From: Auanema rhodensis
Taxonomy: Eukaryota; Animalia; Nematoda
DNA length: 64,000 bases
Assembly (NCBI GenBank): GCA_964057225.1
Contig: OZ059899.1
Span: forward strand, 4,030,001 to 4,094,000
Reading direction: 5' to 3'
Made by a program: the position numbers and the translations under genes. The notes below the pieces were generated by a model that had not been told where the DNA came from, searched no databases, and saw only the letters and a list, made by a program, of their open reading frames with translations. This document shows, piece after piece, positions 1 to 14,100 of the stretch. The number at the start of each line of letters is the position of its first letter. Position 1 is the stretch's first letter.

Positions 1-3000
1 AATTTTTTCGTTGAATAACATTGTCCATCGTCTTTGCCTTGAAAAAAGGAATCTAAAAACATCTACTTTTTGCTAAATTATTCCGAAATTTCTCGAAAAA
101 ATTTTTGTCAAAATGTTTTTGGAAGCAATGTTGAGTGTACATGGAAACTCAACATACACTAATGCATCATTTTTCAAACGATCATAACTAATTTTTGTAT
201 TAAGCGTTTCTCAATGTAGTATAGTGCATTCGATGCGGATTTTTAAGCTGCGTCGATCTGTGTTATCAGATTTGCGCTAGCTTAAAAATGCACCGAGATA
301 TCAACTGATATAAGTTTACACTTATATCCTCGATTTTCACCCTGAAGAATTAATTTTTTCGTTGAATAGCATTGTCCATCGTCTTTGCCTTGAAAAAAGG
401 AATCTAAAAACATCTACTTTTTGCTAAATTATTTTAAAATTTTTCGAAAAAATTTTTGTCAAAATGTTTTTGGAAGCAATGTTGAGTGTACATGGAAACT
501 CAACATACACTAATGCATCATTTTTCAAACGATCATAACTAATTTTTGTATTAAGCGTTTCTCAATGTAGTATAGTGCATTCGATGCGGATTTTTAAGCT
601 GCGTCGATCTGTGTTATCAGATTTGCGCTAGCTTAAAAATGCACCGAGATATCAACTGATATAAGTTCACACTTATATCCTCGATTTTCACCCTGAAGAA
701 TTGATTTTTTCGTTGAATAACATTGTCCATCGTCTTTGCCTTGAAAAATGGAATCTAAAAACATCTACTTTTTGCTAAATTATTTTGAAATTTTTCGAAA
801 AAAGTTTTGTCAAAATGTTTTTGGAAGCAATGTTGAGTGTACATGGAAACTCAACATACACTAATGCATCATTTTTCAAACGATCATAACTAATTTTTGT
901 ATTAAGCGTTTCTCAATGTAGTATAGTGCATTCGATGCGGATTTTTAAGCTGCGTCGTTCTGTGTTATTAGATTTGCGCTAGCTTAAAAATGCAACGAGA
1001 TATCAACTGATATAAGTTCACACTTATATCCTCGATTTTCACCCTGAAGAATTAATTTTTTCGTTGAATAACATTGTCCATCGTCTTTGCCTTGAAAAAA
1101 GGAATCTAAAAACATCTACTTTTTGCTAAATTATTCCGAAATTTCTCGAAAAAATTTTTGTCAAAATGTTTTTGGAAGCAATGTTGAGTGTACATGGAAA
1201 CTCAACATACACTAATGCATCATTTTTCAAACGATCATAACTAATTTTTGTATTAAGCGTTTCTCAATGTAGTATAGTGCATTCGATGCGGATTTTTAAG
1301 CTGCGTCGATCTGTGTTATCAGATTTGCGCTAGCTTAAAAATGCACCGAGATATCAACTGATATAAGTTCACACTTATATCCTCGATTTTCACCCTGAAG
1401 AATTGATTTTTTCGTTGAATAACATTGTCCATCGTCTTTGCCTTGAAAAATGGAATCTAAAAACATCTACTTTTTGCTAAATTATTTTGAAATTTTTCGA
1501 AAAAATTTTTGTCAAAATGTTTTTGGAAGCAATGTTGAGTGTACATGGAAACTCAACATACACTAATGCATCATTTTTCAAACGATCATAACTAATTTTT
1601 GTATTAAGCATTTCTCAATGTAGTATAGTGCATTCGATGCGGATTTTTAAGCTGCGTCGATCTATGTTATCAGATTTGCGCTAGCTTAAAAATGCACCAA
1701 GATATCAACTGATATAAGTTCACACTTATATCCTCGATTTTCACCCTGAAGAATTAATTTTTTCGTTGAATAACATTGTCCATCGTCTTTGCCTTGAAAA
1801 AAGGAATCTAAAAACATCTACTTTTTGCTAAATTATTCCGAAATTTCTCGAAAAAATTTTTGTCAAAATGTTTTTGGAAGCAATGTTGAGTGTACATGGA
1901 AACTCAACATACACTAATGCATCATTTTTCAAACGATCATAACTAATTTTTGTATTAAGCGTTTCTCAATGTAGTATAGTGCATTCGATGCGGATTTTTA
2001 AGCTGCGTCGATCTGTGTTATCAGATTTGCGCTAGCTTAAAAATGCACCGAGATATCAACTGATATAAGTTCACACTTATATCCTCGATTTTCACCCTGA
2101 AGAATTGATTTTTTCGTTGAATAACATTGTCCATCGTCTTTGCCTTGAAAAATGGAATCTAAAAACATCTACTTTTTGCTAAATTATTTTGAAATTTTTC
2201 GAAAAAAGTTTTGTCAAAATGTTTTTGGAAGCAATGTTGAGTGTACATGGAAACTCAACATACACTAATGCATCATTTTTCAAACGATCATAACTAATTT
2301 TTGTATTAAGCGTTTCTCAATGTAGTATAGTGCATTCGATGCGGATTTTTAAGCTGCGTCGTTCTGTAATATCAGATTTGCGCTAGCTTAAAAATGCAAC
2401 GAGATATCAACTGATATAAGTTCACACTTATATCCTCGATTTTCACCCTGAAGAATTAATTTTTTCGTTGAATAACATTGTCCATCGTCTTTGCCTTGAA
2501 AAAAGGAATCTAAAAACATCTACTTTTTGCTAAATTATTTCGAAATTTCTCGAAAAAATTTTTGTCAAAATGTTTTTGGAAGCAATGTTGAGTGTACATG
2601 GAAACTCAACATACACTAATGCATCATTTTTCAAACGATCATAACTAATTTTTGTATTAAGCGTTTCTCAATGTAGTATAGTGCATTCGATGCGGATTTT
2701 TAAGCTGCGTCGATCTGTGTTATCAGATTTGCGCTAGCTTAAAAATGCACCGAGATATCAACTGATATAAGTTCACACTTATATCCTCGATTTTCACCCT
2801 GAAGAATTGATTTTTTCGTTGAATAACATTGTCCATCGTCTTTGCCTTGAAAAATGGAATCTAAAAACATCTACTTTTTGCTAAATTATTTTGAAATTTT
2901 TCGAAAAAAGTTTTGTCAAAATGTTTTTGGAAGCAATGTTGAGTGTACATGGAAACTCAACATACACTAATGCATCATTTTTCAAACGATCATAACTAAT

Positions 3001-5930
3001 TTTTGTATTAAGCGTTTCTCAATGTAGTATAGTGCATTCGATGCGGATTTTTAAGCTGCGTCGATCTGTGTTATCAGATTTGCGCTAGCTTAAAAATGCA
3101 CCGAGATATCAACTGATATAAGTTCACACTTATATCCTCGATTTTCACCCTGAAGAATTGATTTTTTCGTTGAATAACATTGTCCATCGTCTTTGCCTTG
3201 AAAAATGGAATCTAAAAACATCTACTTTTTGCTAAATTATTTTGAAATTTTTCGAAAAAAGTTTTGTCAAAATGTTTTTGGAAGCAATGTTGAGTGTACA
3301 TGGAAACTCAACATACACTAATGCATCATTTTTCAAACGATCATAACTAATTTTTGTATTAAGCGTTTCTCAATGTAGTATAGTGCATTCGATGCGGATT
3401 TTTAAGCTGCGTCGTTCTGTGTTATCAGATTTGCGCTAGCTTAAAAATGCAACGAGATATCAACTGATATAAGTTCACACTTATATCCTCGATTTTCACC
3501 CTGAAGAATTAATTTTTTCGTTGAATAACATTGTCCATCGTCTTTGCCTTGAAAAAAGGAATCTAAAAACATCTACTTTTTGCTAAATTATTTCGAAATT
3601 TCTCGAAAAAATTTTTGTCAAAATGTTTTTGGAAGCAATGTTGAGTGTACATGGAAACTCAACATACACTAATGCATCATTTTTCAAACGATCATAACTA
3701 ATTTTTGTATTAAGCGTTTCTCAATGTAGTATAGTGCATTCGATGCGGATTTTTAAGCTGCGTCGATCTGTGTTATCAGATTTGCGCTAGCTTAAAAATG
3801 CACCGAGATATCAACTGATATAAGTTCACACTTATATCCTCGATTTTCACCCTGAAGAATTGATTTTTTCGTTGAATAACATTGTCCATCGTCTTTGCCT
3901 TGAAAAATGGAATCTAAAAACATCTACTTTTTGCTAAATTATTTTGAAATTTTTCGAAAAAAGTTTTGTCAAAATGTTTTTGGAAGCAATGTTGAGTGTA
4001 CATGGAAACTCAACATACACTAATGCATCATTTTTCAAACGATCATAACTAATTTTTGTATTAAGCGTTTCTCAATGTAGTATAGTGCATTCGATGCGGA
4101 TTTTTAAGCTGCGTCGATCTGTGTTATCAGATTTGCGCTAGCTTAAAAATGCACCGAGATATCAACTGATATAAGTTCACACTTATATCCTCGATTTTCA
4201 CCCTGAAGCATTGATTTTTTCGTTGAATAACATTGTCCATCGTCTTTGCCTTGAAAAATGGAATCTAAAAACATCTACTTTTTGCTAAATTATTTTGAAA
4301 TTTTTCGAAAAAAGTTTTGTCAAAATGTTTTTGGAAGCAATGTTGAGTGTACATGGAAACTCAACATACACTAATGCATCATTTTTCAAACGATCATAAC
4401 TAATTTTTGTATTAAGCGTTTCTCAATGTAGTATAGTGCATTCGATGCGGATTTTTAAGCTGCGTCGATCTGTGTTATCAGATTTGCGCTAGCTTAAAAA
4501 TGCACCGAGATATCAACTGATATAAGTTCACACTTATATCCTCGATTTTCACCCTGAAGAATTGATTTTTTCGTTGAATAACATTGTCCATCGTCTTTGC
4601 CTTGAAAAATGGAATCTAAAAACATCTACTTTTTGCTAAATTATTTTGAAATTTTTCGAAAAAAGTTTTGTCAAAATGTTTTTGGAAGCAATGTTGAGTG
4701 TACATGGAAACTCAACATACACTAATGCATCATTTTTCAAACGATCATAACTAATTTTTGTATTAAGCGTTTCTCAATGTAGTATAGTGCATTCGATGCG
4801 GATTTTTAAGCTGCGTCGATCTGTGTTATCAGATTTGCGCTAGCTTAAAAATGCACCGAGATATCAACTGATATAAGTTCACACTTATATCCTCGATTTT
4901 CACCCTGAAGCATTGATTTTTTCGTTGAATAACATTGTCCATCGTCTTTGCCTTGAAAAATGGAATCTAAAAACATCTACTTTTTGCTAAATTATTTTGA
5001 AATTTTTCGAAAAAAGTTTTGTCAAAATGTTTTTGGAAGCAATGTTGAGTGTACATGGAAACTCAACATACACTAATGCATCATTTTTCAAACGATCATA
5101 ACTAATTTTTGTATTAAGCGTTTCTCAATGTAGTATAGTGCATTCGATGCGGATTTTTAAGCTGCGTCGATCTGTGTTATCAGATTTGCGCTAGCTTAAA
5201 AATGCACCGAGATATCAACTGATATAAGTTCACACTTATATCCTCGATTTTCACCCTGAAGAATTAATTTTTTCGTTGAATAACATTGTCCATCGTCTTT
5301 GCCTTGAAAAAAGGAATCTAAAAACATCTACTTTTTGCTAAATTATTTTGAAATTTTTCGAAAAAAGTTTTGTCAAAATGTTTTTGGAAGCAATGTTGAG
5401 TGTACATGGAAACTCAACATACACTAATGCATCATTTTTCAAACGATCATAACTAATTTTTGTATTAAGCGTTTCTCAATGTAGTATAGTGCATTCGATG
5501 CGGATTTTTAAGCTGCGTCGTTCTGTGTTATCAGATTTGCGCTAGCTTAAAAATGCACCGAGATATGAACTGATATAAGTTCACACTTATATCCTCGATT
5601 TTCACCCTGAAGAATTAATTTTTTCGTTGAATAACATTGTCCATCGTCTTTGCCTTGAAAAAAGGAATCTAAAAACATCTACTTTTTGCTAAATTATTTT
5701 GAAATTTTTCGAAAAAAGTTTTGTCAAAATGTTTTTGGAAGCAATGTTGAGTGTACATGGAAACTCAACATACACTAATGCATCATTTTTCAAACGATCA
5801 TAACTAATTTTTGTATTAAGCGTTTCTCAATGTAGTATAGTGCATTCGATGCGGATTTTTAAGCTGCGTCGTTCTGTGTTATCAGATTTGCGCTAGCTTA
5901 AAAATGCAACGAGATATCAACTGATATAAG
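1..5930. repeat. 351-bp tandem satellite array, left arm (16 full monomers plus the interrupted 17th)
   Basis: The motif [a/g]attttttcgttgaata recurs at 1, 352, 703, 1054 and onward with an exact 351-bp period. Monomers differ by only a few substitutions. The array runs off the left edge of the window. Confidence 0.99.
5927..5930. other. Target-site duplication, left copy (TAAG)
   Basis: The empty satellite site reads gatataagttcac. The left junction is gatataag|agtc and the right junction is gaca|taagttcac. Confidence 0.85.
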
Positions 5931-6410
5931 AGTCAAAAGACTGTATAATAAAAAAGGAAAAAAAATAAAAAAATAAAAGAATTTATTAAAAAATTAGAAA
6001 AATAAAAGACAGACTTAAACTGATTAAAATATATCACAATTATCTTATATCAACAATTTTAGGTAAACAATTGATCTTATCACTAATCTTAGATGTGCAT
6101 GCTTGATAATCTGATTACGGTAGTTGATCTTGGCAACATGCCCAAAGTTGTAACTTTGTTAGAACTTGTCTAAATGAAATAAGAATGATATATTCGTGCT
6201 TGTCGTTGCAAGACGAATTCAACTGTACTATATTCATGTAGTTAACTATATGTAGTTAAGTATGTGATTTTATATGATATAGGTTTTATCAATGTTTTAC
6301 ATACTTCTCAAGATAATATAATGTTTAACGTACTCAACAGAGTGTTTGTGGATAACTATACGTTATATACCACATGAAACATAGGTGGGTAACTATAGCC
6401 AACTGCGACA
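5931..6410 (-). repeat. 3' LTR (480 bp)
   Basis: Direct repeat of 10694-11173, preceded on the minus strand by the purine tract AGGACGGGGA. Confidence 0.96.
5982..5987 (-). terminator. Candidate polyadenylation signal AATAAA in the 3' LTR
   Basis: Minus-strand AATAAA about 50 nt from the LTR end, followed by a long T-rich tract. The 5' LTR copy is at 10745-10750. Confidence 0.55.
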
Positions 6411-6420
6411 TCCCCGTCCT
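6411..6420 (-). promoter_or_regulatory. Polypurine tract (plus-strand primer)
   Basis: Minus strand AGGACGGGGA (9 of 10 purines) abuts the TGT start of the 3' LTR. Confidence 0.85.
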
Positions 6421-6521
6421 ACAAAAAATTCTCGTCCTCGAGAAATAAATTCTCTTTATTAACGTAATAGACATATAAAACAAGACATAGCAACCTTGTA
6501 CAAGAAAAAAATTAACATCAA

Positions 6522-9500
6522 TCAATGTTTATGAAAGGGTGTGTGGCGGGATTTGAAAGAAACATTTTGTTTCACGTGGTGTAATTGATTATTTGCGCGC
6601 TTTGGAACATTTTGAGCGCTAGTGCGTTTTTTGCGATCCACCCTGTTAAACATAGTGGCCATACCAAGCCCTAAAAGGTTTTTCTTGAGCATAGTTGTAT
6701 AATTTTTCAAATCATCAACTCTTATACGGTCAGTTGATTTATTATAAGGTAATGGGCCACCCGAATGCCAAAAATGAGTAATTAAAGGTAAATCGTTTTT
6801 ACGACAACCAACATACTGAACGAAACAAGACTCATTAAGAGAATGTAACTGGAATTTCAAAAGCTCCGTTTCTTTTTCCCACACTTCCATTGAGTCAAAA
6901 AATTTATGATCGTCGTAGCGACATAAAGGACTCAGTAATACTATATGCGCTTGCAACACTACCCCCAAACGTGACAAAATTCTCAAAATTTCTTGAATTT
7001 CGGAAGTATTTGTAATCATTGGTAGTGTTACAAAAGCATATTTCAAATTTACTTTGTTCAGTAAATATCGTGGGATATCTTCTTTCATTGAAGAATATTC
7101 AACTGAACGACCATAAGGAAATTCAAATTCTGTTAACCCGCTATAGTTTTTAGGGTAGAAGAAAATATCTTCTTTAACTCTCTTTTCTTCCCGAGAAATT
7201 TTTCCTAACGATAAAAGAAAAGCTTTTGAGGCGTTGTCTTCTGACATTCCGAAAAGGGCGCATTCTGTGAATGTTAGATGATAATTCTCTAACAATGGAT
7301 AATCTATTTTAGCGTGTAAACAATTTTTCCGTTGAATACAAAATGCTTCAGCCATGCTTGTTGCTTGCGGCATGACTTGCATACGATTAATAACATTGAG
7401 TTTTTGATCAATCCATATTTTTGGATTCTCTAAAACTTCGATAAACTGGGCCAGACGATATGTATTTGAAATTTGTAGTCCTTTGAGTGGTATCGGACAT
7501 TTCTCTCCAAAAATGGAGCCATAAGTTGCTGTTTTCCAACTGCACTGTTCTTCATATCCGTCGTTTCTTTGTATTTTTCCCGAACATTTATACAAAGGGT
7601 GGCAGGCTTGATCAGGAGTTATGATCAGGTTTCTGAAACAAATACGATTACACTTTTTTTTTCTGTTACGTTTTGTTTCAGCAGTTACTACTCCCAAATT
7701 ATCAGGGATTTTATGTAGTAGATCTGTTTGAACTTTTAGAGGTTCATTATTTTCCTCTAGTTCATTAATAAATGCAGAAGTGTTATATTTTGATATCACT
7801 CTGTACGGTCCTCGAAAATCGAAAGCTTGTTTCTTATTCGGATCACCTCTTTTTTCAAAAGGTGTTTTAATGAAAACTCGATCACTTATTTTTGGTGAAT
7901 CGGATTTTTTCTCACTCTTTTTATCAGAGTATGATTTAAACCTTTTTTTGGTTTTATCATTCCTATTTTTATTTTCTATTGAAACAATAGGAAGAGCCAT
8001 AGCACTATTGCTAGGTTCATTCAATCTCTTGTTTAGAAGATTTTTGAAAACCTTCTTAAATCCGTTCCTGACTCTAATAGGAACAGGTCGAACTTTCAAT
8101 CTGATTGGTTTTGTGACCATATCAGTATGTGTTAGGTCGGCTTCATTTAGAGCAACCTGCACATTATTTTTAACTAACCCCAAATTGGGAGCTTTAAACT
8201 TTTGACTCTCAAAAGTTCGTTTATCCAATCGGTAAGAGTCCTGATGCTGTATTTCGCATTCGTGTTCAGGTTTTTCTCTCAAACTGATCTTTTTTATCGC
8301 TGGATTTGGCTCTATTGTTTCAAAACCAAATCTCCAGTGACCTATAAATTCTCCTGCCTTAATCATCACAGGGTTGTCCGTGTTATTATGTAAATTCACG
8401 GTTGATATATTATCTTTGATGGGATATATTCCCGAAACTGCAACAGCAGTTAGAGCGTTAAAAAACATTTCTCTTTTTATTGAAATCGCGTCACAAGAAA
8501 CTAACACTTGATTTTGCGAAAAAGGAGGTAAATACACTCTTTTTAGAGTCATTGCTTTAGTTTTATTGAACTTTAAGCATATGTCTAAAGAATTCAAACA
8601 ATTTGTACCCAATATCATTTGATTTTCTTTGTTTTTGCTGACTAAAAAGTCAACAATTGCCTCTTTGTGGTTTTCATCACACAAAACAGACATTCGCACG
8701 GCGCCAACAAAATGCATTTGATCACCTGATGCGTTAACTATGAACTTTTTATTAGTCCATGGTAATTCCACTATTCTTTCATCTGCGTTGATTTTTTTTT
8801 GTTTCAACGAATCGATTACTCGAACTAGCAATGATGAACTGATGACCGAAATTTGCGATCCAGTATCTAGTAATGCATCATGCATATGGACTTGACATAA
8901 AGTCATTCTCCCTAATGCTGGTTTACCAAACAATGGGGGGTTTCTCAAATCACTTGAAGTGATTTGGATTGCTCGATTCCAACTCTCAGCTTTTCTGTTA
9001 ATGCTGGGTGGTTCTCGAGGAGTATTAAGTCTACTTTCATTCTCTATTCTCTCATTTTGTCTTTTAAAACATACGTTTGCAGTATGTCCTTTTTTATTAC
9101 AGTTCACACAAATAATTTCATTATTATTAGTGTTTCTCACTCTTCTCTCATCGGAGATATGTGGATATTGTTTCCGGCTCAAGTTTTGTTTCTGCTCGGA
9201 TTCATTGGATTGATTGATTGAACGAGTTAACTTATTTCGTTCACATCTGAGGGCGATTTGTTTTACTTTTTCGTAAATTTCTTCGTCCTCCTCATCCTCT
9301 ATTTTTTCAAGGATGGAAACTCCACAAGAACAATTACAAAGTTCTTGGTACAGTTTATTTGCTCTTTCGAACGATAATAAACCAGGAATTAAATCTGGAT
9401 TAGCCAGTTGAGTCAGTTTTTCTAACTCATCGCAGTAATTTACTAACGACTGGGATCTATTCCATTTCAAACTTTTCAAGTTTTCAGTAGCCTGCATTCT

Positions 9501-10280
9501 TCCCTGTCTTTGTGAAACGGTTGACTCTCTACGTAAACTGTTCACTATGACATCTAAGGAACTTTGCTTTATGGCTTCAGGTAACTCTCTATAGCGATTT
9601 CTGATCTCGCCTTGGAGTTTATTGATGAATAAAAGTTTTTTTTCACGTTGAGAAAAAACATCATCTGGGTATTTATAGTTAAATCGTTCTGTGAAATCAA
9701 CGAATTCACTATACGATCCACCCTTATAAGCCTCAACCTCAGGTAGTAACTGGGTTTTCATGAGTTTTGCAATATCGTAAAAGGACTTACCCTGATAACT
9801 GCACTCCTGGCTGTAAAGTTTGTTCTTTCTTGCTGAGCTCTTCAGCTGTAAAGAAGAAAAGGATTTATTCAGTTTAGAATTTACTAACGAACCTTTTTCA
9901 CTATCTGTAATTGACAGATTCATAAATTTTTCATCGGTTACTTGTTCAACCTGTAAAAAATCATGTTTAATATTATGATTAATCAAATTTTCAATTTTAA
10001 TCAAAACATTATCATTGTTAGAATCACAGATGTTGTGGATCTGATTTAACAAATCAATCTCTTTTTGAAAATTTTTTATTTCAGAACTAGAGATTTTTAA
10101 ATTCTTAGCTATTTTAGCTAGATTTTTCTCGGCTTCGACTCTTGGTCTACAACCGGTTTTAGTATGATTTAAAATCAAACTTTGAGCAAAAGATAAAATG
10201 TTATCTATATTACTCTCAAATTTATCAAAATTAAAAGGTAGTCTTACCTCGTTCATTTCGATATCCAGTTCCTCACTCAT
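6522..10280 (-). CDS. Gag-protease polyprotein with internally deleted Pol (RT N-terminal remnant fused to the integrase C-terminal GPY/F region) and a C-terminal extension, 1252 aa
   Basis: Capsid-like segment LPEVEAYKGGSYSEFVDFTERFNYKY. Zinc knuckle CVNCNKKGHTANVC (9069-9110). Aspartic protease LLDTGSQISVI (DTG at 8859-8867) plus ILGTNCL. RT-start remnant PIRLKVRPVP...EPSNSAMALPIV (about 7968-8114). IN C-terminal ISDRVF...FRGPYRV (GPY at 7803-7811). No YxDD, RNase H, HHCC or DDE region is visible. Confidence 0.92.
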   Translation of the reverse strand: MSEELDIEMNEVRLPFNFDKFESNIDNILSFAQSLILNHTKTGCRPRVEAEKNLAKIAKNLKISSSEIKNFQKEIDLLNQIHNICDSNNDNVLIKIENLINHNIKHDFLQVEQVTDEKFMNLSITDSEKGSLVNSKLNKSFSSLQLKSSARKNKLYSQECSYQGKSFYDIAKLMKTQLLPEVEAYKGGSYSEFVDFTERFNYKYPDDVFSQREKKLLFINKLQGEIRNRYRELPEAIKQSSLDVIVNSLRRESTVSQRQGRMQATENLKSLKWNRSQSLVNYCDELEKLTQLANPDLIPGLLSFERANKLYQELCNCSCGVSILEKIEDEEDEEIYEKVKQIALRCERNKLTRSINQSNESEQKQNLSRKQYPHISDERRVRNTNNNEIICVNCNKKGHTANVCFKRQNERIENESRLNTPREPPSINRKAESWNRAIQITSSDLRNPPLFGKPALGRMTLCQVHMHDALLDTGSQISVISSSLLVRVIDSLKQKKINADERIVELPWTNKKFIVNASGDQMHFVGAVRMSVLCDENHKEAIVDFLVSKNKENQMILGTNCLNSLDICLKFNKTKAMTLKRVYLPPFSQNQVLVSCDAISIKREMFFNALTAVAVSGIYPIKDNISTVNLHNNTDNPVMIKAGEFIGHWRFGFETIEPNPAIKKISLREKPEHECEIQHQDSYRLDKRTFESQKFKAPNLGLVKNNVQVALNEADLTHTDMVTKPIRLKVRPVPIRVRNGFKKVFKNLLNKRLNEPSNSAMALPIVSIENKNRNDKTKKRFKSYSDKKSEKKSDSPKISDRVFIKTPFEKRGDPNKKQAFDFRGPYRVISKYNTSAFINELEENNEPLKVQTDLLHKIPDNLGVVTAETKRNRKKKCNRICFRNLIITPDQACHPLYKCSGKIQRNDGYEEQCSWKTATYGSIFGEKCPIPLKGLQISNTYRLAQFIEVLENPKIWIDQKLNVINRMQVMPQATSMAEAFCIQRKNCLHAKIDYPLLENYHLTFTECALFGMSEDNASKAFLLSLGKISREEKRVKEDIFFYPKNYSGLTEFEFPYGRSVEYSSMKEDIPRYLLNKVNLKYAFVTLPMITNTSEIQEILRILSRLGVVLQAHIVLLSPLCRYDDHKFFDSMEVWEKETELLKFQLHSLNESCFVQYVGCRKNDLPLITHFWHSGGPLPYNKSTDRIRVDDLKNYTTMLKKNLLGLGMATMFNRVDRKKRTSAQNVPKRANNQLHHVKQNVSFKSRHTPFHKH

Positions 10281-10311
10281 GATGGAGATATAGGCAATGA
10301 CTGTTTGTCAA

Positions 10312-10323
10312 CTGGAAATAAAA
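10312..10323 (-). promoter_or_regulatory. Candidate 3' splice or trans-splice acceptor upstream of the gag ATG
   Basis: Minus strand TTTTATTTCCAG ends 31 nt before the ATG at 10280 and resembles the nematode TTTTCAG/TTTCCAG acceptor consensus. Confidence 0.4.
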
Positions 10324-10649
10324 TTATTAGTTTTCTATACGAAAAAATAATTTAAAATATTGTCAAAAAAATTCTATACGAACAATGACAAAAAATTTTG
10401 ATTTCTTCTCGAAATCAAAAGTGAAAGTTTCAACTCTCTCAAGTTTCTCCGAAAAAAAAATTCTGTTAACACCTAATCAGTGTTTAGCAAAATTTTTTTT
10501 TTTCCTCTTTTTTTTTTTTTCACAAAAAATTTTATGAAAAAAAAAAAATTCAGAAAAAATCGGAAAAACCCTATACGGGAGAGTTGTGACTAAATCACCA
10601 AGAGCTATACGCTCAAAAATAGGTTAAGAAACTATACGTTTCCCTATTT
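10321..10649 (-). promoter_or_regulatory. 5' leader cluster of five stem-loops sharing a C-GUAUA-G loop (candidate packaging or protein-binding signal)
   Basis: Plus-strand CTATACG at 10335, 10374, 10571, 10605 and 10632, each flanked by a different self-complementary stem. Confidence 0.7.
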
Positions 10650-10678
10650 AACAAAAAAACAATCAATCGAGCAGAGAA

Positions 10679-10693
10679 CCGGTTCGGCCCCCA
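10679..10693 (-). promoter_or_regulatory. Primer-binding site, tRNA-Pro
   Basis: Minus strand TGGGGGCCGAACCGG directly after the 5' LTR. It is complementary to a tRNA 3' end ...CCGGTTCGGCCC-CCA, which I recall as the Caenorhabditis-type tRNA-Pro 3' end. Confidence 0.88.
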
Positions 10694-11173
10694 AGTCAAA
10701 AGACTGTATAATAAAAAAGGAAAAAAAATAAAAAAATAAAAGAATTTATTAAAAAATTAGAAAAATAAAAGACAGACTTAAACTGATTAAAATATATCAC
10801 AATTATCTTATATCAACAATTTTAGGTAAACAATTGATCTTATCACTAATCTTAGATGTGCATGCTTGATAATCTGATTACGGTAGTTGATCTTGGCAAC
10901 ATGCCCAAAGTTGTAACTTTGTTAGAACTTGTCTAAATGAAATAAGAATGATATATTCGTGCTTGTCGTTGCAAGACGAATTCAACTGTACTATATTCAT
11001 GTAGTTAACTATATGTAGTTAAGTATGTGATTTTATATGATATAGGTTTTATCAATGTTTTACATACTTCTCAAGATAATATAATGTTTAACGTACTCAA
11101 CAGAGTGTTTGTGGATAACTATACGTTATATACCACATGAAACATAGGTGGGTAACTATAGCCAACTGCGACA
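10694..11173 (-). repeat. 5' LTR (480 bp)
   Basis: Direct repeat of 5931-6410 with no mismatch found by eye. The minus strand reads TGTCGCAG...TTTTGACT and is followed directly by the PBS. Confidence 0.96.
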
Positions 11174-11177
11174 TAAG
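11174..11177. other. Target-site duplication, right copy (TAAG)
   Basis: Same four bases as 5927-5930. A 5-bp ATAAG reading is formally possible but would remove the terminal T of the TG LTR end. Confidence 0.85.
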
Positions 11178-14100
11178 TTCACACTTATATCCTCGATTTT
11201 CACCCTGAAGAATTAATTTTTTCGTTGAATAACATTGTCCATCGTCTTTGCCTTGAAAAAAGGAATCTAAAAACATCTACTTTTTGCTAAATTATTTTGA
11301 AATTTTTCGAAAAAAGTTTTGTCAAAATGTTTTTGGAAGCAATGTTGAGTGTACATGGAAACTCAACATACACTAATGCATCATTTTTCAAACGATCATA
11401 ACTAATTTTTGTATTAAGCGTTTCTCAATGTAGTATAGTGCATTCGATGCGGATTTTTAAGCTGCGTCGTTCTGTGTTATCAGATTTGCGCTAGCTTAAA
11501 AATGCAACGAGATATCAACTGATATAAGTTCACACTTATATCCTCGATTTTCACCCTGAAGAATTAATTTTTTCGTTGAATAACATTGTCCATCGTCTTT
11601 GCCTTGAAAAAAGGAATCTAAAAACATCTACTTTTTGCTAAATTATTTTGAAATTTTTCGAAAAAAGTTTTGTCAAAATGTTTTTGGAAGCAATGTTGAG
11701 TGTACATGGAAACTCAACATACACTAATGCATCATTTTTCAAACGATCATAACTAATTTTTGTATTAAGCGTTTCTCAATGTAGTATAGTGCATTCGATG
11801 CGGATTTTTAAGCTGCGTCGTTCTGTGTTATCAGATTTGCGCTAGCTTAAAAATGCAACGAGATATCAACTGATATAAGTTCACACTTATATCCTCGATT
11901 TTCACCCTGAAGAATTAATTTTTTCGTTGAATAACATTGTCCATCGTCTTTGCCTTGAAAAAAGGAATCTAAAAACATCTACTTTTTGCTAAATTATTTT
12001 GAAATTTTTCGAAAAAAGTTTTGTCAAAATGTTTTTGGAAGCAATGTTGAGTGTACATGGAAACTCAACATACACTAATGCATCATTTTTCAAACGATCA
12101 TAACTAATTTTTGTATTAAGCGTTTCTCAATGTAGTATAGTGCATTCGATGCGGATTTTTAAGCTGCGTCGTTCTGTGTTATCAGATTTGCGCTAGCTTA
12201 AAAATGCAACGAGATATCAACTGATATAAGTTCACACTTATATCCTCGATTTTCACCCTGAAGAATTAATTTTTTCGTTGAATAACATTGTCCATCGTCT
12301 TTGCCTTGAAAAAAGGAATCTAAAAACATCTACTTTTTGCTAAATTATTTTAAAATTTTTCGAAAAAATTTTTGTCAAAATGTTTTTGGAAGCAATGTTG
12401 AGTGTACATGGAAACTCAACATACACTAATGCATCATTTTTCAAACGATCATAACTAATTTTTGTATTAAGCGTTTCTCAATGTAGTATAGTGCATTCGA
12501 TGCGGATTTTTAAGCTGCGTCGATCTGTGTTATCAGATTTGCGCTAGCTTAAAAATGCACCAAGATATCAACTGATATAAGTTCACACTTATATCCTCGA
12601 TTTTCACCCTGAAGAATTGATTTTTTCGTTGAATAACATTGTCCATCGTCTTTGCCTTGAAAAATGGAATCTAAAAACATCTACTTTTTGCTAAATTATT
12701 TTGAAATTTTTCGAAAAAAGTTTTGTCAAAATGTTTTTGGAAGCAATGTTGAGTGTACATGGAAACTCAACATACACTAATGCATCATTTTTCAAACGAT
12801 CATAACTAATTTTTGTATTAAGCGTTTCTCAATGTAGTATAGTGCATTCGATTCGGATTTTTAAGCTGCGTCGATCTGTGTTATCAGATTTGCGCTAGCT
12901 TAAAAATGCACCGAGATATCAACTGATATAAGTTCACACTTATATCCTCGATTTTCACCCTGAAGAATTAATTTTTTCGTTGAATAACATTGTCCATCGT
13001 CTTTGCCTTGAAAAAAGGAATCTAAAAACATCTACTTTTTGCTAAATTATTTCGAAATTTCTCGAAAAAATTTTTGTCAAAATGTTTTTGGAAGCAATGT
13101 TGAGTGTACATGGAAACTCAACATACACTAATGCATCATTTTTCAAACGATCATAACTAATTTTTGTATCAAGCGTTTCTCAATGTAGTATAGTGCATTC
13201 GATGCGGATTTTTAAGCTGCGTCGATCTGTGTTATCAGATTTGCGCTAGCTTAAAAATGCACCGAGATATCAACTGATATAAGTTCACACTTATATCCTC
13301 GATTTTCACCCTGAAGAATTGATTTTTTCGTTGAATAACATTGTCCATCGTCTTTGCCTTGAAAAATGAAATCTAAAAACATCTACTTTTTGCTAAATTA
13401 TTTTGAAATTTTTCGAAAAAAGTTTTGTCAAAATGTTTTTGGAAGCAATGTTGAGTGTACATGGAAACTCAACATACACTAATGCATCATTTTTCAAACG
13501 ATCATAACTAATTTTTGTATTAAGCGTTTCTCAATGTAGTATAGTGCATTCGATGCGGATTTTTAAGCTGCGTCGTTCTGTGTTATCAGATTTCCGCTAG
13601 CTTAAAAATGCAACGAGATATCAACTGATATAAGTTCACACTTATATCCTCGATTTTCACCCTGAAGAATTAATTTTTTCGTTGAATAACATTGTCCATC
13701 GTCTTTGCCTTGAAAAAAGGAATCTAAAAACATCTACTTTTTGCTAAATCATTTTAAAATTTTTCGAAAAAATTTTTGTCAAAATGTTTTTGGAAGCAAT
13801 GTTGAGTGTACATGGAAACTCAACATACACTAATGCATCATTTTTCAAACGATCATAACTAATTTTTGTATTAAGCATTTCTCAATGTAGTATAGTGCAT
13901 TCGATGCGGATTTTTAAGCTGCGTCGATCTGTGTTATCAGATTTGCGCTAGCTTAAAAATGCACCAAGATATCAACTGATATAAGTTCACACTTATATCC
14001 TCGATTTTCACCCTGAAGAATTAATTTTTTCGTTGAATAACATTGTCCATCGTCTTTGCCTTGAAAAAAGGAATCTAAAAACATCTACTTTTTGCTAAAT

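What the first reader, a model, noticed from the sequence alone, without database searches (positions are those of the whole stretch)
5931..11173. Recently mobile non-autonomous Gypsy element that keeps Gag-PR and the integrase tail but has lost RT, RNase H and the IN core in frame
Seen: one uninterrupted 1252-codon ORF. The RT start remnant (aa about 723-771) joins the IN C-terminal region (KSYSDKK...ISDRVF...FRGPYRV) near 7960-7970. Established: Gypsy Pol has the full RT, RNase H and IN core between these points. The remnants are decayed against the Gypsy consensus (GIIEPSxSPWASPIVLV appears as RLNEPSNSAMALPIVSI; VGDRV appears as ISDRV). This suggests the deletion is old, yet the LTRs are identical and the frame is still open through about 480 further codons. 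Inference: a lineage that makes its own capsid, protease and C-terminal domain but borrows RT and IN from a helper, analogous to plant TR-GAG elements. It might also produce RNA-carrying virus-like particles.
Basis: partly seen in the sequence, partly recalled or inferred. Interest (0 to 1): 0.85.

Follow-up and report, generated by a model that had tools for sequence, protein, structure and literature searches.

The report
Deleted nematode Cer1-like retrotransposon in satellite
[quoted passage not shown] Its capsid, protease and accessory tail stay intact while the leftover RT stub has decayed, so it probably belongs to a helper-dependent lineage, a kind of element already known elsewhere.

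Summary
Window 5931-11173 is a 5,243-bp LTR element on the minus strand. It has two identical 480-bp LTRs, a 4-bp target duplication (CTTA), a PBS, a PPT and one 1,252-codon ORF. It sits in a 351-bp satellite that fills the rest of the window.

Against about 40 full-length relatives, including C. elegans Cer1, the ORF is collinear except for one break at aa 773-776. About 730-745 residues are missing there: RT, RNase H, the IN zinc finger and the IN core.

The roughly 370 codons after the IN remnant are not a novelty. They match the tail of full-length strongylid relatives, which sits where Cer1 encodes the second half of CERV. The tail folds into a Cys-rich domain plus a G-protein/SGNH-like alpha/beta domain.

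The RT stub is a clear outlier. Its conservation relative to Gag and PR is 1.21, against 1.79-2.67 in all 23 full-length relatives compared. Gag, PR and the invariant tail residues are kept. With identical LTRs, this decay predates the insertion, which favours a trans-mobilised, non-autonomous lineage.

I could not test for several copies sharing the junction, or for the helper, because no close relative exists in any searchable collection. Apparent RT-less relatives in public proteomes proved to be gene-model artefacts. This is a new member of a known kind, of moderate interest. The contig is nematode-like, not human.

The parts
11174..11177 (-). Upstream copy of the 4-bp target-site duplication (CTTA)
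   Evidence: Read. The empty site is present in 166 satellite units.
10694..11173 (-). 5' LTR, 480 bp, starts TGTCGC and ends TTGACT
   Evidence: It has 0 of 480 mismatches to the 3' LTR.
10676..10693 (-). Primer-binding site TGGGGGCCGAACCGGTTC, directly after the 5' LTR
   Evidence: Read. It starts with TGG. From memory, its first bases match the classical tRNA-Pro PBS; this was not tested against a nematode tRNA.
10281..10675 (-). Leader (5' UTR) with five copies of CGTATAG and long A and T runs
   Evidence: The window holds 8 matches, all on the element's sense strand, against 1.9 expected.
6522..10280 (-). Single ORF of 1252 codons plus stop: Gag, PR, RT stub, IN C-terminus, CERV-like tail
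9201..9773 (-). Gag capsid-like region (aa 170-360)
   Evidence: It is matched by more than 100 nematode relatives. ORF 160-389 aligns to Cer1 355-579, which overlaps the CA-like domain of Cer1 Gag (aa 372-541, PMC10309623). The ORF keeps 24 of 27 relative-conserved columns.
9069..9110 (-). Nucleocapsid CCHC zinc knuckle (aa 391-404)
   Evidence: The CX2CX4HX4C motif is read. There is a weak match to the Air2 zinc knuckle in the PDB. Relatives carry zf-CCHC here.
8556..8918 (-). Aspartyl protease (aa 455-575), with LLDTGS at aa 470-475 and ILGTN at 556-560
   Evidence: Pfam gag-asp_proteas E=4e-4, below the gathering score. The ORF keeps 19 of 23 relative-conserved columns.
7959..8183 (-). Remnant of the RT N-terminus (aa 700-774); the last 29 aa are decayed and a 9-aa segment is missing at aa 722/723
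7950..7965 (-). Deletion junction (aa 773-776): RT fingers joined to the IN C-terminal region, with about 730-745 aa missing
7641..7949 (-). IN C-terminal remnant (aa 778-880), including the SH3-like domain
   Evidence: Pfam SH3_Tf2-1 E=0.012. Alignment to the post-rve region of relatives.
7284..7631 (-). Tail domain 1 (aa 884-999): Cys-rich, mostly helical; keeps the relative-invariant C899, C913, C987 and H989
   Evidence: (pLDDT about 90).
6669..7283 (-). Tail domain 2 (aa 1000-1204): three-layer alpha/beta domain, G-protein/SGNH-hydrolase-like, with no conserved catalytic residues
6525..6668 (-). Basic, low-confidence C-terminal end (aa 1205-1252)
   Evidence: pLDDT below 50. Relatives also end in basic, P/R-rich tails.
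6411..6420 (-). Polypurine tract AGGACGGGGA, directly before the 3' LTR
   Evidence: Read.
5931..6410 (-). 3' LTR, 480 bp
5927..5930 (-). Downstream copy of the target-site duplication (CTTA)

Best explanation
This is a copy of a non-autonomous, internally deleted derivative of a nematode Cer1-clade Ty3/Gypsy retrotransposon.

Shown:
- It has intact cis signals: identical LTRs, PBS, PPT and a 4-bp TSD.
- Its single ORF still encodes Gag (capsid-like region plus CCHC knuckle), an aspartyl protease, a stub of RT, the C-terminal part of IN, and the family's post-IN tail.
- The tail sits where Cer1 encodes the second half of CERV, a protein needed for nuclear export of Cer1 genomic RNA.
- RT, RNase H and the IN catalytic core are absent, so the element cannot copy or integrate itself.

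Inferred:
- Its RNA is transcribed from the LTR and translated into the fusion polyprotein.
- The RNA is packaged by its own and/or a helper's Gag.
- It is reverse-transcribed and integrated by RT and IN supplied in trans by a full-length relative in the same genome.
- The RT stub has decayed at sites invariant in 23 full-length relatives, while Gag, PR and the tail's invariant residues are kept and 1252 codons stay open. The deleted (or at least RT-dead) form has therefore most likely been replicating for some time under selection for its remaining proteins. It is probably not a deletion made in the last cycle.
For: Structure and recency:
- 0 of 480 LTR mismatches, a clean TSD, and an undisturbed satellite phase.

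Deletion:
- collinear with about 40 full-length relatives, always breaking at aa 773-776.

Clade:
- the RT-IN of the relative P0003 is 43-45% identical to strongylid elements. It is 38-40% identical to Caenorhabditis elements, including Cer1 Q17329, and about 32% to other metazoan Gypsy elements.
- the ORF matches Cer1 Gag, the RT start and the IN end.

Relaxed RT stub:
- the ORF keeps 65 of 74 relative-conserved columns in Gag, NC, PR, linker and early RT-N. It keeps only 8 of 16 in aa 746-774 (Fisher p=0.0017).
- identity to 16 strongylid relatives is higher for the ORF than for Caenorhabditis elements in Gag (.26 vs .21) and PR (.28 vs .20). It is much lower in the stub (.32 vs .52).
- the stub/(Gag,PR) ratio is 1.21 for the ORF and 1.79-2.67 for all 23 full-length relatives.

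Tail is ancestral and kept:
- a profile of 23 strongylid tails hits ORF aa 870-1223 at E=2.5e-13.
- the invariant Cys, His and Pro residues are kept.
- the tail gives a confident two-domain fold.

Known precedent for helper-dependent forms that encode a fusion protein: IAP I-delta-1 (PMC6466679).
Against: - Only one copy is available. No second copy with the same junction and no helper element could be found, because nothing closer than about 29% identity is in the searchable collections.
- The relaxation test rests on 29 residues and on distant relatives. A same-genome autonomous element with an equally odd RT start would cancel it.
- The three apparent RT-less relatives that could be checked are gene-model artefacts, so there is no independent sign of such a lineage in other nematodes.
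- Selection on Gag, PR and the tail is inferred from kept conserved residues and an open frame, not from dN/dS.
- The IN remnant looks mildly relaxed.
Confidence: 0.6

Rival explanations
1. This is a one-off deletion. A full-length autonomous element lost 2.2 kb either by template switching during the very reverse-transcription cycle that made this copy, or by a genomic deletion just after insertion. The frame is open only because the copy is young, and the deletion is in frame by chance (about 1 in 3).
For: Identical LTRs mean the copy is too young for its open frame to say anything by itself. Only one copy has been seen. Internal deletions of LTR elements are common (general knowledge; see also 10.1101/2025.09.22.674508 for clade V nematodes).
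Against: The RT stub differs from all 23 full-length relatives at half of their conserved positions and lacks a 9-aa segment. Gag and PR are not unusually diverged. A parent with a working RT is not expected to carry these changes.
Confidence: 0.27
2. This is a host gene derived from a retrotransposon (a domesticated Gag-PR-tail protein) that only looks mobile.
For: The pattern is right for it: an open frame, kept Gag and PR residues, and decayed enzymatic remnants. The same pattern is seen in domesticated Gag-PR genes (general knowledge).
Against: The element has identical LTRs, PBS, PPT and a fresh 4-bp TSD inside a satellite array. Domesticated genes lack these features and sit at conserved single-copy loci.
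Confidence: 0.03
3. This is an assembly artefact: a collapse or chimera inside a repeat-rich region created the apparent deletion.
For: The locus lies in more than 58 kb of near-identical satellite, which is a difficult region to assemble.
Against: The junction is in frame. The flanks are in perfect satellite phase with a TSD. The stub's decay cannot come from a collapse.
Confidence: 0.02

Closest known systems
Cer1 of Caenorhabditis elegans (Ty3/Gypsy, Cer1 clade; polyprotein Q17329, 2272 aa) and its full-length strongylid relatives
   Same: Both have a single long ORF in the order Gag (CA-like, CCHC), PR, RT, RNase H, IN, then a long post-IN tail. The ORF matches Cer1 Gag 355-579, the RT start at 1026-1076 and the IN end at 1818-1923. 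The tail lies where Cer1 encodes the second half of CERV. As described for CERV (PMC10309623), it is predicted to form a Cys-rich domain followed by a G-protein-like alpha/beta domain. Strongylid and Caenorhabditis tail profiles match at 93.8% probability over 46 columns.
   Different: About 740 residues are missing (RT, RNase H, IN zinc finger and core). The element is 5.2 kb long. Identity to Cer1 is only about 20% in Gag and PR. Direct sequence similarity of the ORF tail to Cer1 CERV was not detected, and a spliced CERV-type mRNA has not been shown.
Mouse IAP I-delta-1 proviruses
   Same: An internal deletion leaves one ORF encoding a fusion protein. The form is non-autonomous and mobilised in trans by full-length elements, yet it is the most active subtype, and its fusion protein acts in cis (PMC6466679). 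This is the closest known working model.
   Different: IAP is a vertebrate betaretrovirus-like ERV, unrelated in sequence. Its deletion removes part of gag and part of pol rather than RT through the IN core. Trans-mobilisation is shown by experiment there and only inferred here.
Plant TR-GAG elements (terminal-repeat retrotransposons with a GAG domain)
   Same: They are non-autonomous LTR elements that keep capsid coding capacity and rely on a helper for RT and IN (my own knowledge of Chaparro et al. 2015; the term is used in PMC13570524 and PMC8704663).
   Different: TR-GAG elements keep only gag. This element also keeps PR, enzyme remnants and an accessory tail in one frame. The host kingdom and clade differ. 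It is an analogy, not membership.

Membership tests
Ty3/Gypsy LTR retrotransposon, nematode Cer1 clade | Two LTRs in direct orientation flanked by a short target-site duplication | tested here: met
   480-bp LTRs with 0 mismatches. TSD CTTA against an empty site seen 166 times.
Ty3/Gypsy LTR retrotransposon, nematode Cer1 clade | PBS next to the 5' LTR and a polypurine tract next to the 3' LTR | tested here: met
   TGG-starting 18-mer at 10676-10693 and AGGACGGGGA at 6411-6420. The priming tRNA was not identified.
Ty3/Gypsy LTR retrotransposon, nematode Cer1 clade | Gag with a capsid-like domain and CCHC knuckle, followed by a D-T/S-G protease | tested here: met
   The Pfam protease match is below the gathering score (E=4e-4), but the relative alignments are strong (E down to 1e-49).
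Ty3/Gypsy LTR retrotransposon, nematode Cer1 clade | Pol with RT, RNase H and IN in that order | tested here: not met
   No RVT_1, RNase H or rve. Only an RT-start stub and an IN C-terminal remnant remain, in the Gypsy order. It is a deleted derivative, not a complete member.
Ty3/Gypsy LTR retrotransposon, nematode Cer1 clade | Nearest relatives by sequence belong to the clade | tested here: met
   All named hits are nematode elements. The RT-IN of the relative P0003 is nearer to strongylid and Caenorhabditis Cer1-type elements than to other Gypsy elements.
Non-autonomous LTR retrotransposon lineage (helper-dependent family) | Lacks RT/IN but keeps the cis signals for replication | tested here: met
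Non-autonomous LTR retrotransposon lineage (helper-dependent family) | Several copies share the same deletion junction at different sites | not testable with these tools
   Only 64 kb of the genome is available. There is no close relative in the protein, metagenome or viral collections.
Non-autonomous LTR retrotransposon lineage (helper-dependent family) | An autonomous partner shares LTR ends and PBS in the same genome | not testable with these tools
   Same reason. The PBS is not found in the four relative loci fetched.
Non-autonomous LTR retrotransposon lineage (helper-dependent family) | Transposition took place after the loss of RT function | tested here: inconclusive
   The support is indirect. 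The stub is decayed at relative-invariant sites although the LTRs are identical. The test rests on one copy and 29 residues.
CERV-type accessory protein region of Cer1 elements | [quoted passage not shown] | tested here: met
   ORF aa 881-1252. It is homologous to the same region of full-length strongylid relatives (E=2.5e-13).
CERV-type accessory protein region of Cer1 elements | Cys-rich M domain followed by a Rossmann-type, G-protein-like G domain without catalytic residues (PMC10309623) | tested here: inconclusive
   AF2 model with mean pLDDT 70: a Cys-rich helical domain plus an alpha/beta domain. The best PDB matches are PAF-AH/SGNH folds, TM about 0.5, E=4e-4. There is no conserved Ser/Asp/His. 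This is compatible with CERV but not specific to it.
CERV-type accessory protein region of Cer1 elements | Sequence homology to Caenorhabditis CERV | tested here: inconclusive
   The strongylid-tail profile against the Caenorhabditis-tail profile gives 93.8% probability, E=1.7e-7, but over only 46 columns. There is no direct ORF-Cer1 tail match.
CERV-type accessory protein region of Cer1 elements | Made from a spliced mRNA that joins N-terminal gag exons to the tail | not testable with these tools
   This needs RNA data. Splice-like sites exist at aa 164 and aa 883, but their direct join is out of frame.
Plant TR-GAG | Internal region encodes Gag only | tested here: not met
   PR, an RT stub, an IN remnant and the tail are also encoded.

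The most novel reading that the evidence does not exclude
This is a long-lived 'parasite of a parasite' within the Cer1 clade. The lineage has discarded all nucleic-acid enzymes but is selected to keep its own capsid, protease and CERV-like RNA-export module as one in-frame fusion. Its RNA would then be exported and packaged preferentially in cis while it uses a helper's RT and IN. The retained IN C-terminus or the tail might also contribute to satellite targeting.
Probability: 0.25. Interest if true: 0.65.

Novelty: new member of a known kind. Interest (0 to 1): 0.45.

Why it matters
If the lineage reading holds, it gives the Cer1 clade its first helper-dependent form that keeps capsid, protease and the CERV-like module. 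Cer1's capsids and CERV protein are under active study in C. elegans. Such a form would be a natural separation-of-function variant, showing which proteins act in cis on the element's own RNA.

The work also extends the post-IN tail from Caenorhabditis to strongylid-type elements, with a confident two-domain model. It further warns that 'RT-less' Gag-PR-IN-tail proteins in public nematode proteomes can be gene-model artefacts.

If the copy is a one-off deletion, it is ordinary.

Tried and rejected
1. A word-indexed search of 5.8 billion proteins with the whole ORF gave no hit. The exhaustive HMMER search was needed.
2. An exact-protein look-up of the ORF found nothing on record.
3. Rfam on 4000-13000 found nothing.
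4. The PDB sequence search gave only a zinc-knuckle echo.
5. Apparent RT-less relatives (P0015, P0055, P0103) first looked like independent support for a lineage. I rejected them because their genomic loci L001, L003 and L004 encode RT, RNase H and IN inside the predicted 'introns'. P0005, P0007 and P0074 could not be checked (no contig on record).
6. Metagenome scans with the junction-spanning protein and with the LTR-end/PBS 22-mer found nothing. The viral-contig scan found nothing.
7. The first AF2 run on the tail, with 10 sequences, was too poor to use (pLDDT 45). The run with 21 sequences was usable.
8. I tested a CERV-like splice from the donor at aa 164 to the acceptor at aa 883. The join hits a stop at once.
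9. The PBS was not found in relative loci, and there are no tRNA genes there.
10. A literature search for a 351-bp nematode satellite found nothing useful, so the host species remains unidentified.
11. I considered an esterase function for the SGNH-like domain. I rejected it because relatives have no conserved catalytic residues.

Full report
**What is there**

The whole window is one 351-bp satellite array (2-5930 and 11173-64000, 98% matches, GC about 31%). A single 5,243-bp element on the minus strand interrupts it.

- The LTRs are 5931-6410 and 10694-11173, each 480 bp, with no mismatch.
- The uninterrupted satellite reads GTGTGAACTTATATCAG in 166 units. At the element, CTTA is present on both sides.
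- Satellite spacing across the element is 5598 = 351 + 5243 + 4. This is a clean integration with a 4-bp duplication.
- A TGG-starting 18-mer follows the 5' LTR, and AGGACGGGGA precedes the 3' LTR.
- One ORF of 1252 codons runs from 10280 to 6522.
- The sequence is nematode-like, not human.

**Domain content**

Pfam finds no RVT_1, RNase H or rve. It finds only a weak protease and a weak Tf2-type SH3 domain at aa 800-841. The word-indexed protein search found nothing. An exhaustive HMMER search of 1.84 billion representatives gave 328 hits, the best at only 29% identity. Every hit whose name was looked up is from a nematode, nearly all from strongylids.

The full-length relative P0003 (Gag-PR-RT-RH-IN by Pfam) aligns to the ORF in two collinear blocks:
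- ORF 386-774 aligns to P0003 588-1014, where RVT_1 starts at 1008.
- ORF 775-879 aligns to P0003 1748-1856, after rve at 1549-1646.

Every alignment from the N-terminal side stops at ORF 768-795, most at 772-778. A further search with the RT-IN of P0003 brought in about 40 full-length relatives with matches on both sides. These include the C. elegans Cer1 polyprotein (Q17329, 2272 aa). All show the same break, with about 730-745 residues missing.

The RT-IN of P0003 is 43-45% identical to strongylid elements. It is 38-40% identical to Caenorhabditis Cer1-type elements and about 32% identical to other metazoan Gypsy elements. The element is therefore an internally deleted member of the nematode Cer1 clade. 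The deletion runs from the RT fingers, just after the position of the KKDG motif, to the K..YD motif about 100 residues past the IN core.

**The codons after the junction**

These are not a special feature of this copy.
- ORF 778-880 is the IN C-terminal SH3-like region.
- ORF 881-990 matches the post-IN region of full-length relatives.
- A profile of 23 strongylid tails hits ORF 870-1223 at E=2.5e-13.

[quoted passage not shown] CERV has a Cys-rich M domain and a G-protein-like G domain, is made from a spliced mRNA, and is needed for nuclear export of genomic RNA (PMC10309623).

With 21 aligned tails, AlphaFold gives a model with mean pLDDT 70. It has a Cys-rich, mainly helical domain (pLDDT about 90) and an alpha/beta domain. 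The best PDB matches for the alpha/beta domain are PAF acetylhydrolase Ib and other SGNH-fold proteins (TM about 0.5, E=4e-4). From my own knowledge, PAF-AH Ib was described as G-protein-like.

Relatives have no conserved Ser/Asp/His in this domain, so it is not an esterase. The ORF keeps the relative-invariant C899, C913, C987, H989, P1043, P1087 and P1118. Strongylid and Caenorhabditis tail profiles match at 93.8% probability over the central beta-alpha-beta segment.

I read the tail as CERV-like by position and fold. Homology to CERV is plausible but not proven.

**One-off or lineage?**

Identical LTRs mean the copy is too young for its open frame to be informative on its own. The informative feature is the RT stub.

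All 23 full-length relatives compared, from Strongylida and Caenorhabditis, keep the S.S.W..P.VLV.KK motif (20 of them followed by D-G or D-N) and a 9-aa segment before the P-I/V-R/K motif. The ORF has SNSAMALPIVSIENKNRN and lacks the 9 aa.

Three tests point the same way:
- At relative-conserved columns, the ORF keeps 65 of 74 residues in Gag, NC, PR, linker and early RT-N, but only 8 of 16 in aa 746-774 (Fisher p=0.0017).
- I used Caenorhabditis elements as controls of similar or greater divergence. The ORF is closer to strongylid relatives than they are in Gag (.26 vs .21) and PR (.28 vs .20), but far less similar in the stub (.32 vs .52).
- The stub/(Gag,PR) identity ratio is 1.21 for the ORF and 1.79-2.67 for every full-length relative.

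The IN remnant is at the low edge of the range as well (1.19 against 1.23-1.81).

These changes cannot have arisen since an insertion whose LTRs are still identical. They were already in the RNA that was copied. If the stub drifted neutrally that far, an unconstrained AT-rich ORF of 3.7 kb would be expected to have collected many stop codons. That is an inference, a rough estimate and not a computed test. Selection on the remaining coding capacity is therefore likely.

This favours a helper-dependent lineage. The same logic was shown by experiment for mouse IAP I-delta-1 (PMC6466679).

**Limits**

- Only one copy exists in the data.
- I could not look for other copies with the junction or for the helper. 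No relative closer than about 29% identity is in any searchable collection.
- Public proteins that seemed to share the RT-less architecture are artefacts. For P0015, P0055 and P0103, the genomic loci encode RT, RNase H and IN within predicted introns.
- The relaxation signal rests on a short segment and on distant relatives.
- A same-genome autonomous element with the same odd RT start would overturn it.

**Verdict**

The best explanation is a trans-mobilised, non-autonomous Cer1-clade derivative that keeps Gag, PR and a CERV-like tail (confidence about 0.6). The main rival is a one-off recent deletion (about 0.27).

The kind is known: deleted, helper-dependent LTR elements that encode a fusion protein. 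This would be a new member in nematodes, of moderate interest.

Noticed in passing
window 2-5930 and 11174-64000: The entire window apart from the element is one 351-bp satellite array: about 167 units, 98% identical, GC about 31%, with a recurrent G-to-A variant in a few units. The host species and the chromosomal role of the satellite are unknown, and no paper on a 351-bp nematode satellite was found.
   Followed up: partly
window 10335-10638 (leader), plus 6356, 9709 and 11119: The heptamer CGTATAG occurs 8 times in the window, always on the element's sense strand, with five copies in the 413-nt leader (1.9 expected by chance). It might be a packaging, dimerisation or protein-binding motif.
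   Followed up: partly
L001:6634-8928, L003:5985-7763, L004:4071-6380: Public strongylid gene models look like Gag-PR fused to the IN tail: O. dentatum KHJ97017.1, N. brasiliensis VDL78193.1 and Cooperia KAK6056865.1. Each has 'introns' that in fact encode RT, RNase H and IN, some with frameshifts. They are annotation artefacts that mimic RT-less elements.
   Followed up: yes
window 9790 and 7632 (minus strand): A consensus-like splice donor (AG|GTAAGT) lies at ORF aa 164, at the end of the Gag N-terminal region. An acceptor (TTTGTTTCAG|) lies at aa 883, at the start of the tail. This recalls the spliced cerv mRNA of Cer1. The direct join is out of frame and stops at once.
   Followed up: partly
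window 10440-10570 (minus strand): The leader holds long homopolymer runs (T11, A13, A11) between the PBS and the start codon.
   Followed up: no
window 7780-8205 (+ strand): A 141-codon GTG-started ORF lies antisense to the RT-stub/IN-remnant region. It is probably a chance ORF and was not examined.
   Followed up: no
P0160-P0183, P0079, P0154 (tails after IN): Full-length strongylid Cer1-type elements carry a 350-450-aa post-IN tail. It has invariant Cys residues and a predicted alpha/beta domain, and it weakly matches the Caenorhabditis Cer1 tail profile. PMC10309623 states that CERV has no obvious homology outside nematodes and compares it only among Caenorhabditis species. A CERV-like module therefore seems wider in clade V nematodes.
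   Followed up: partly
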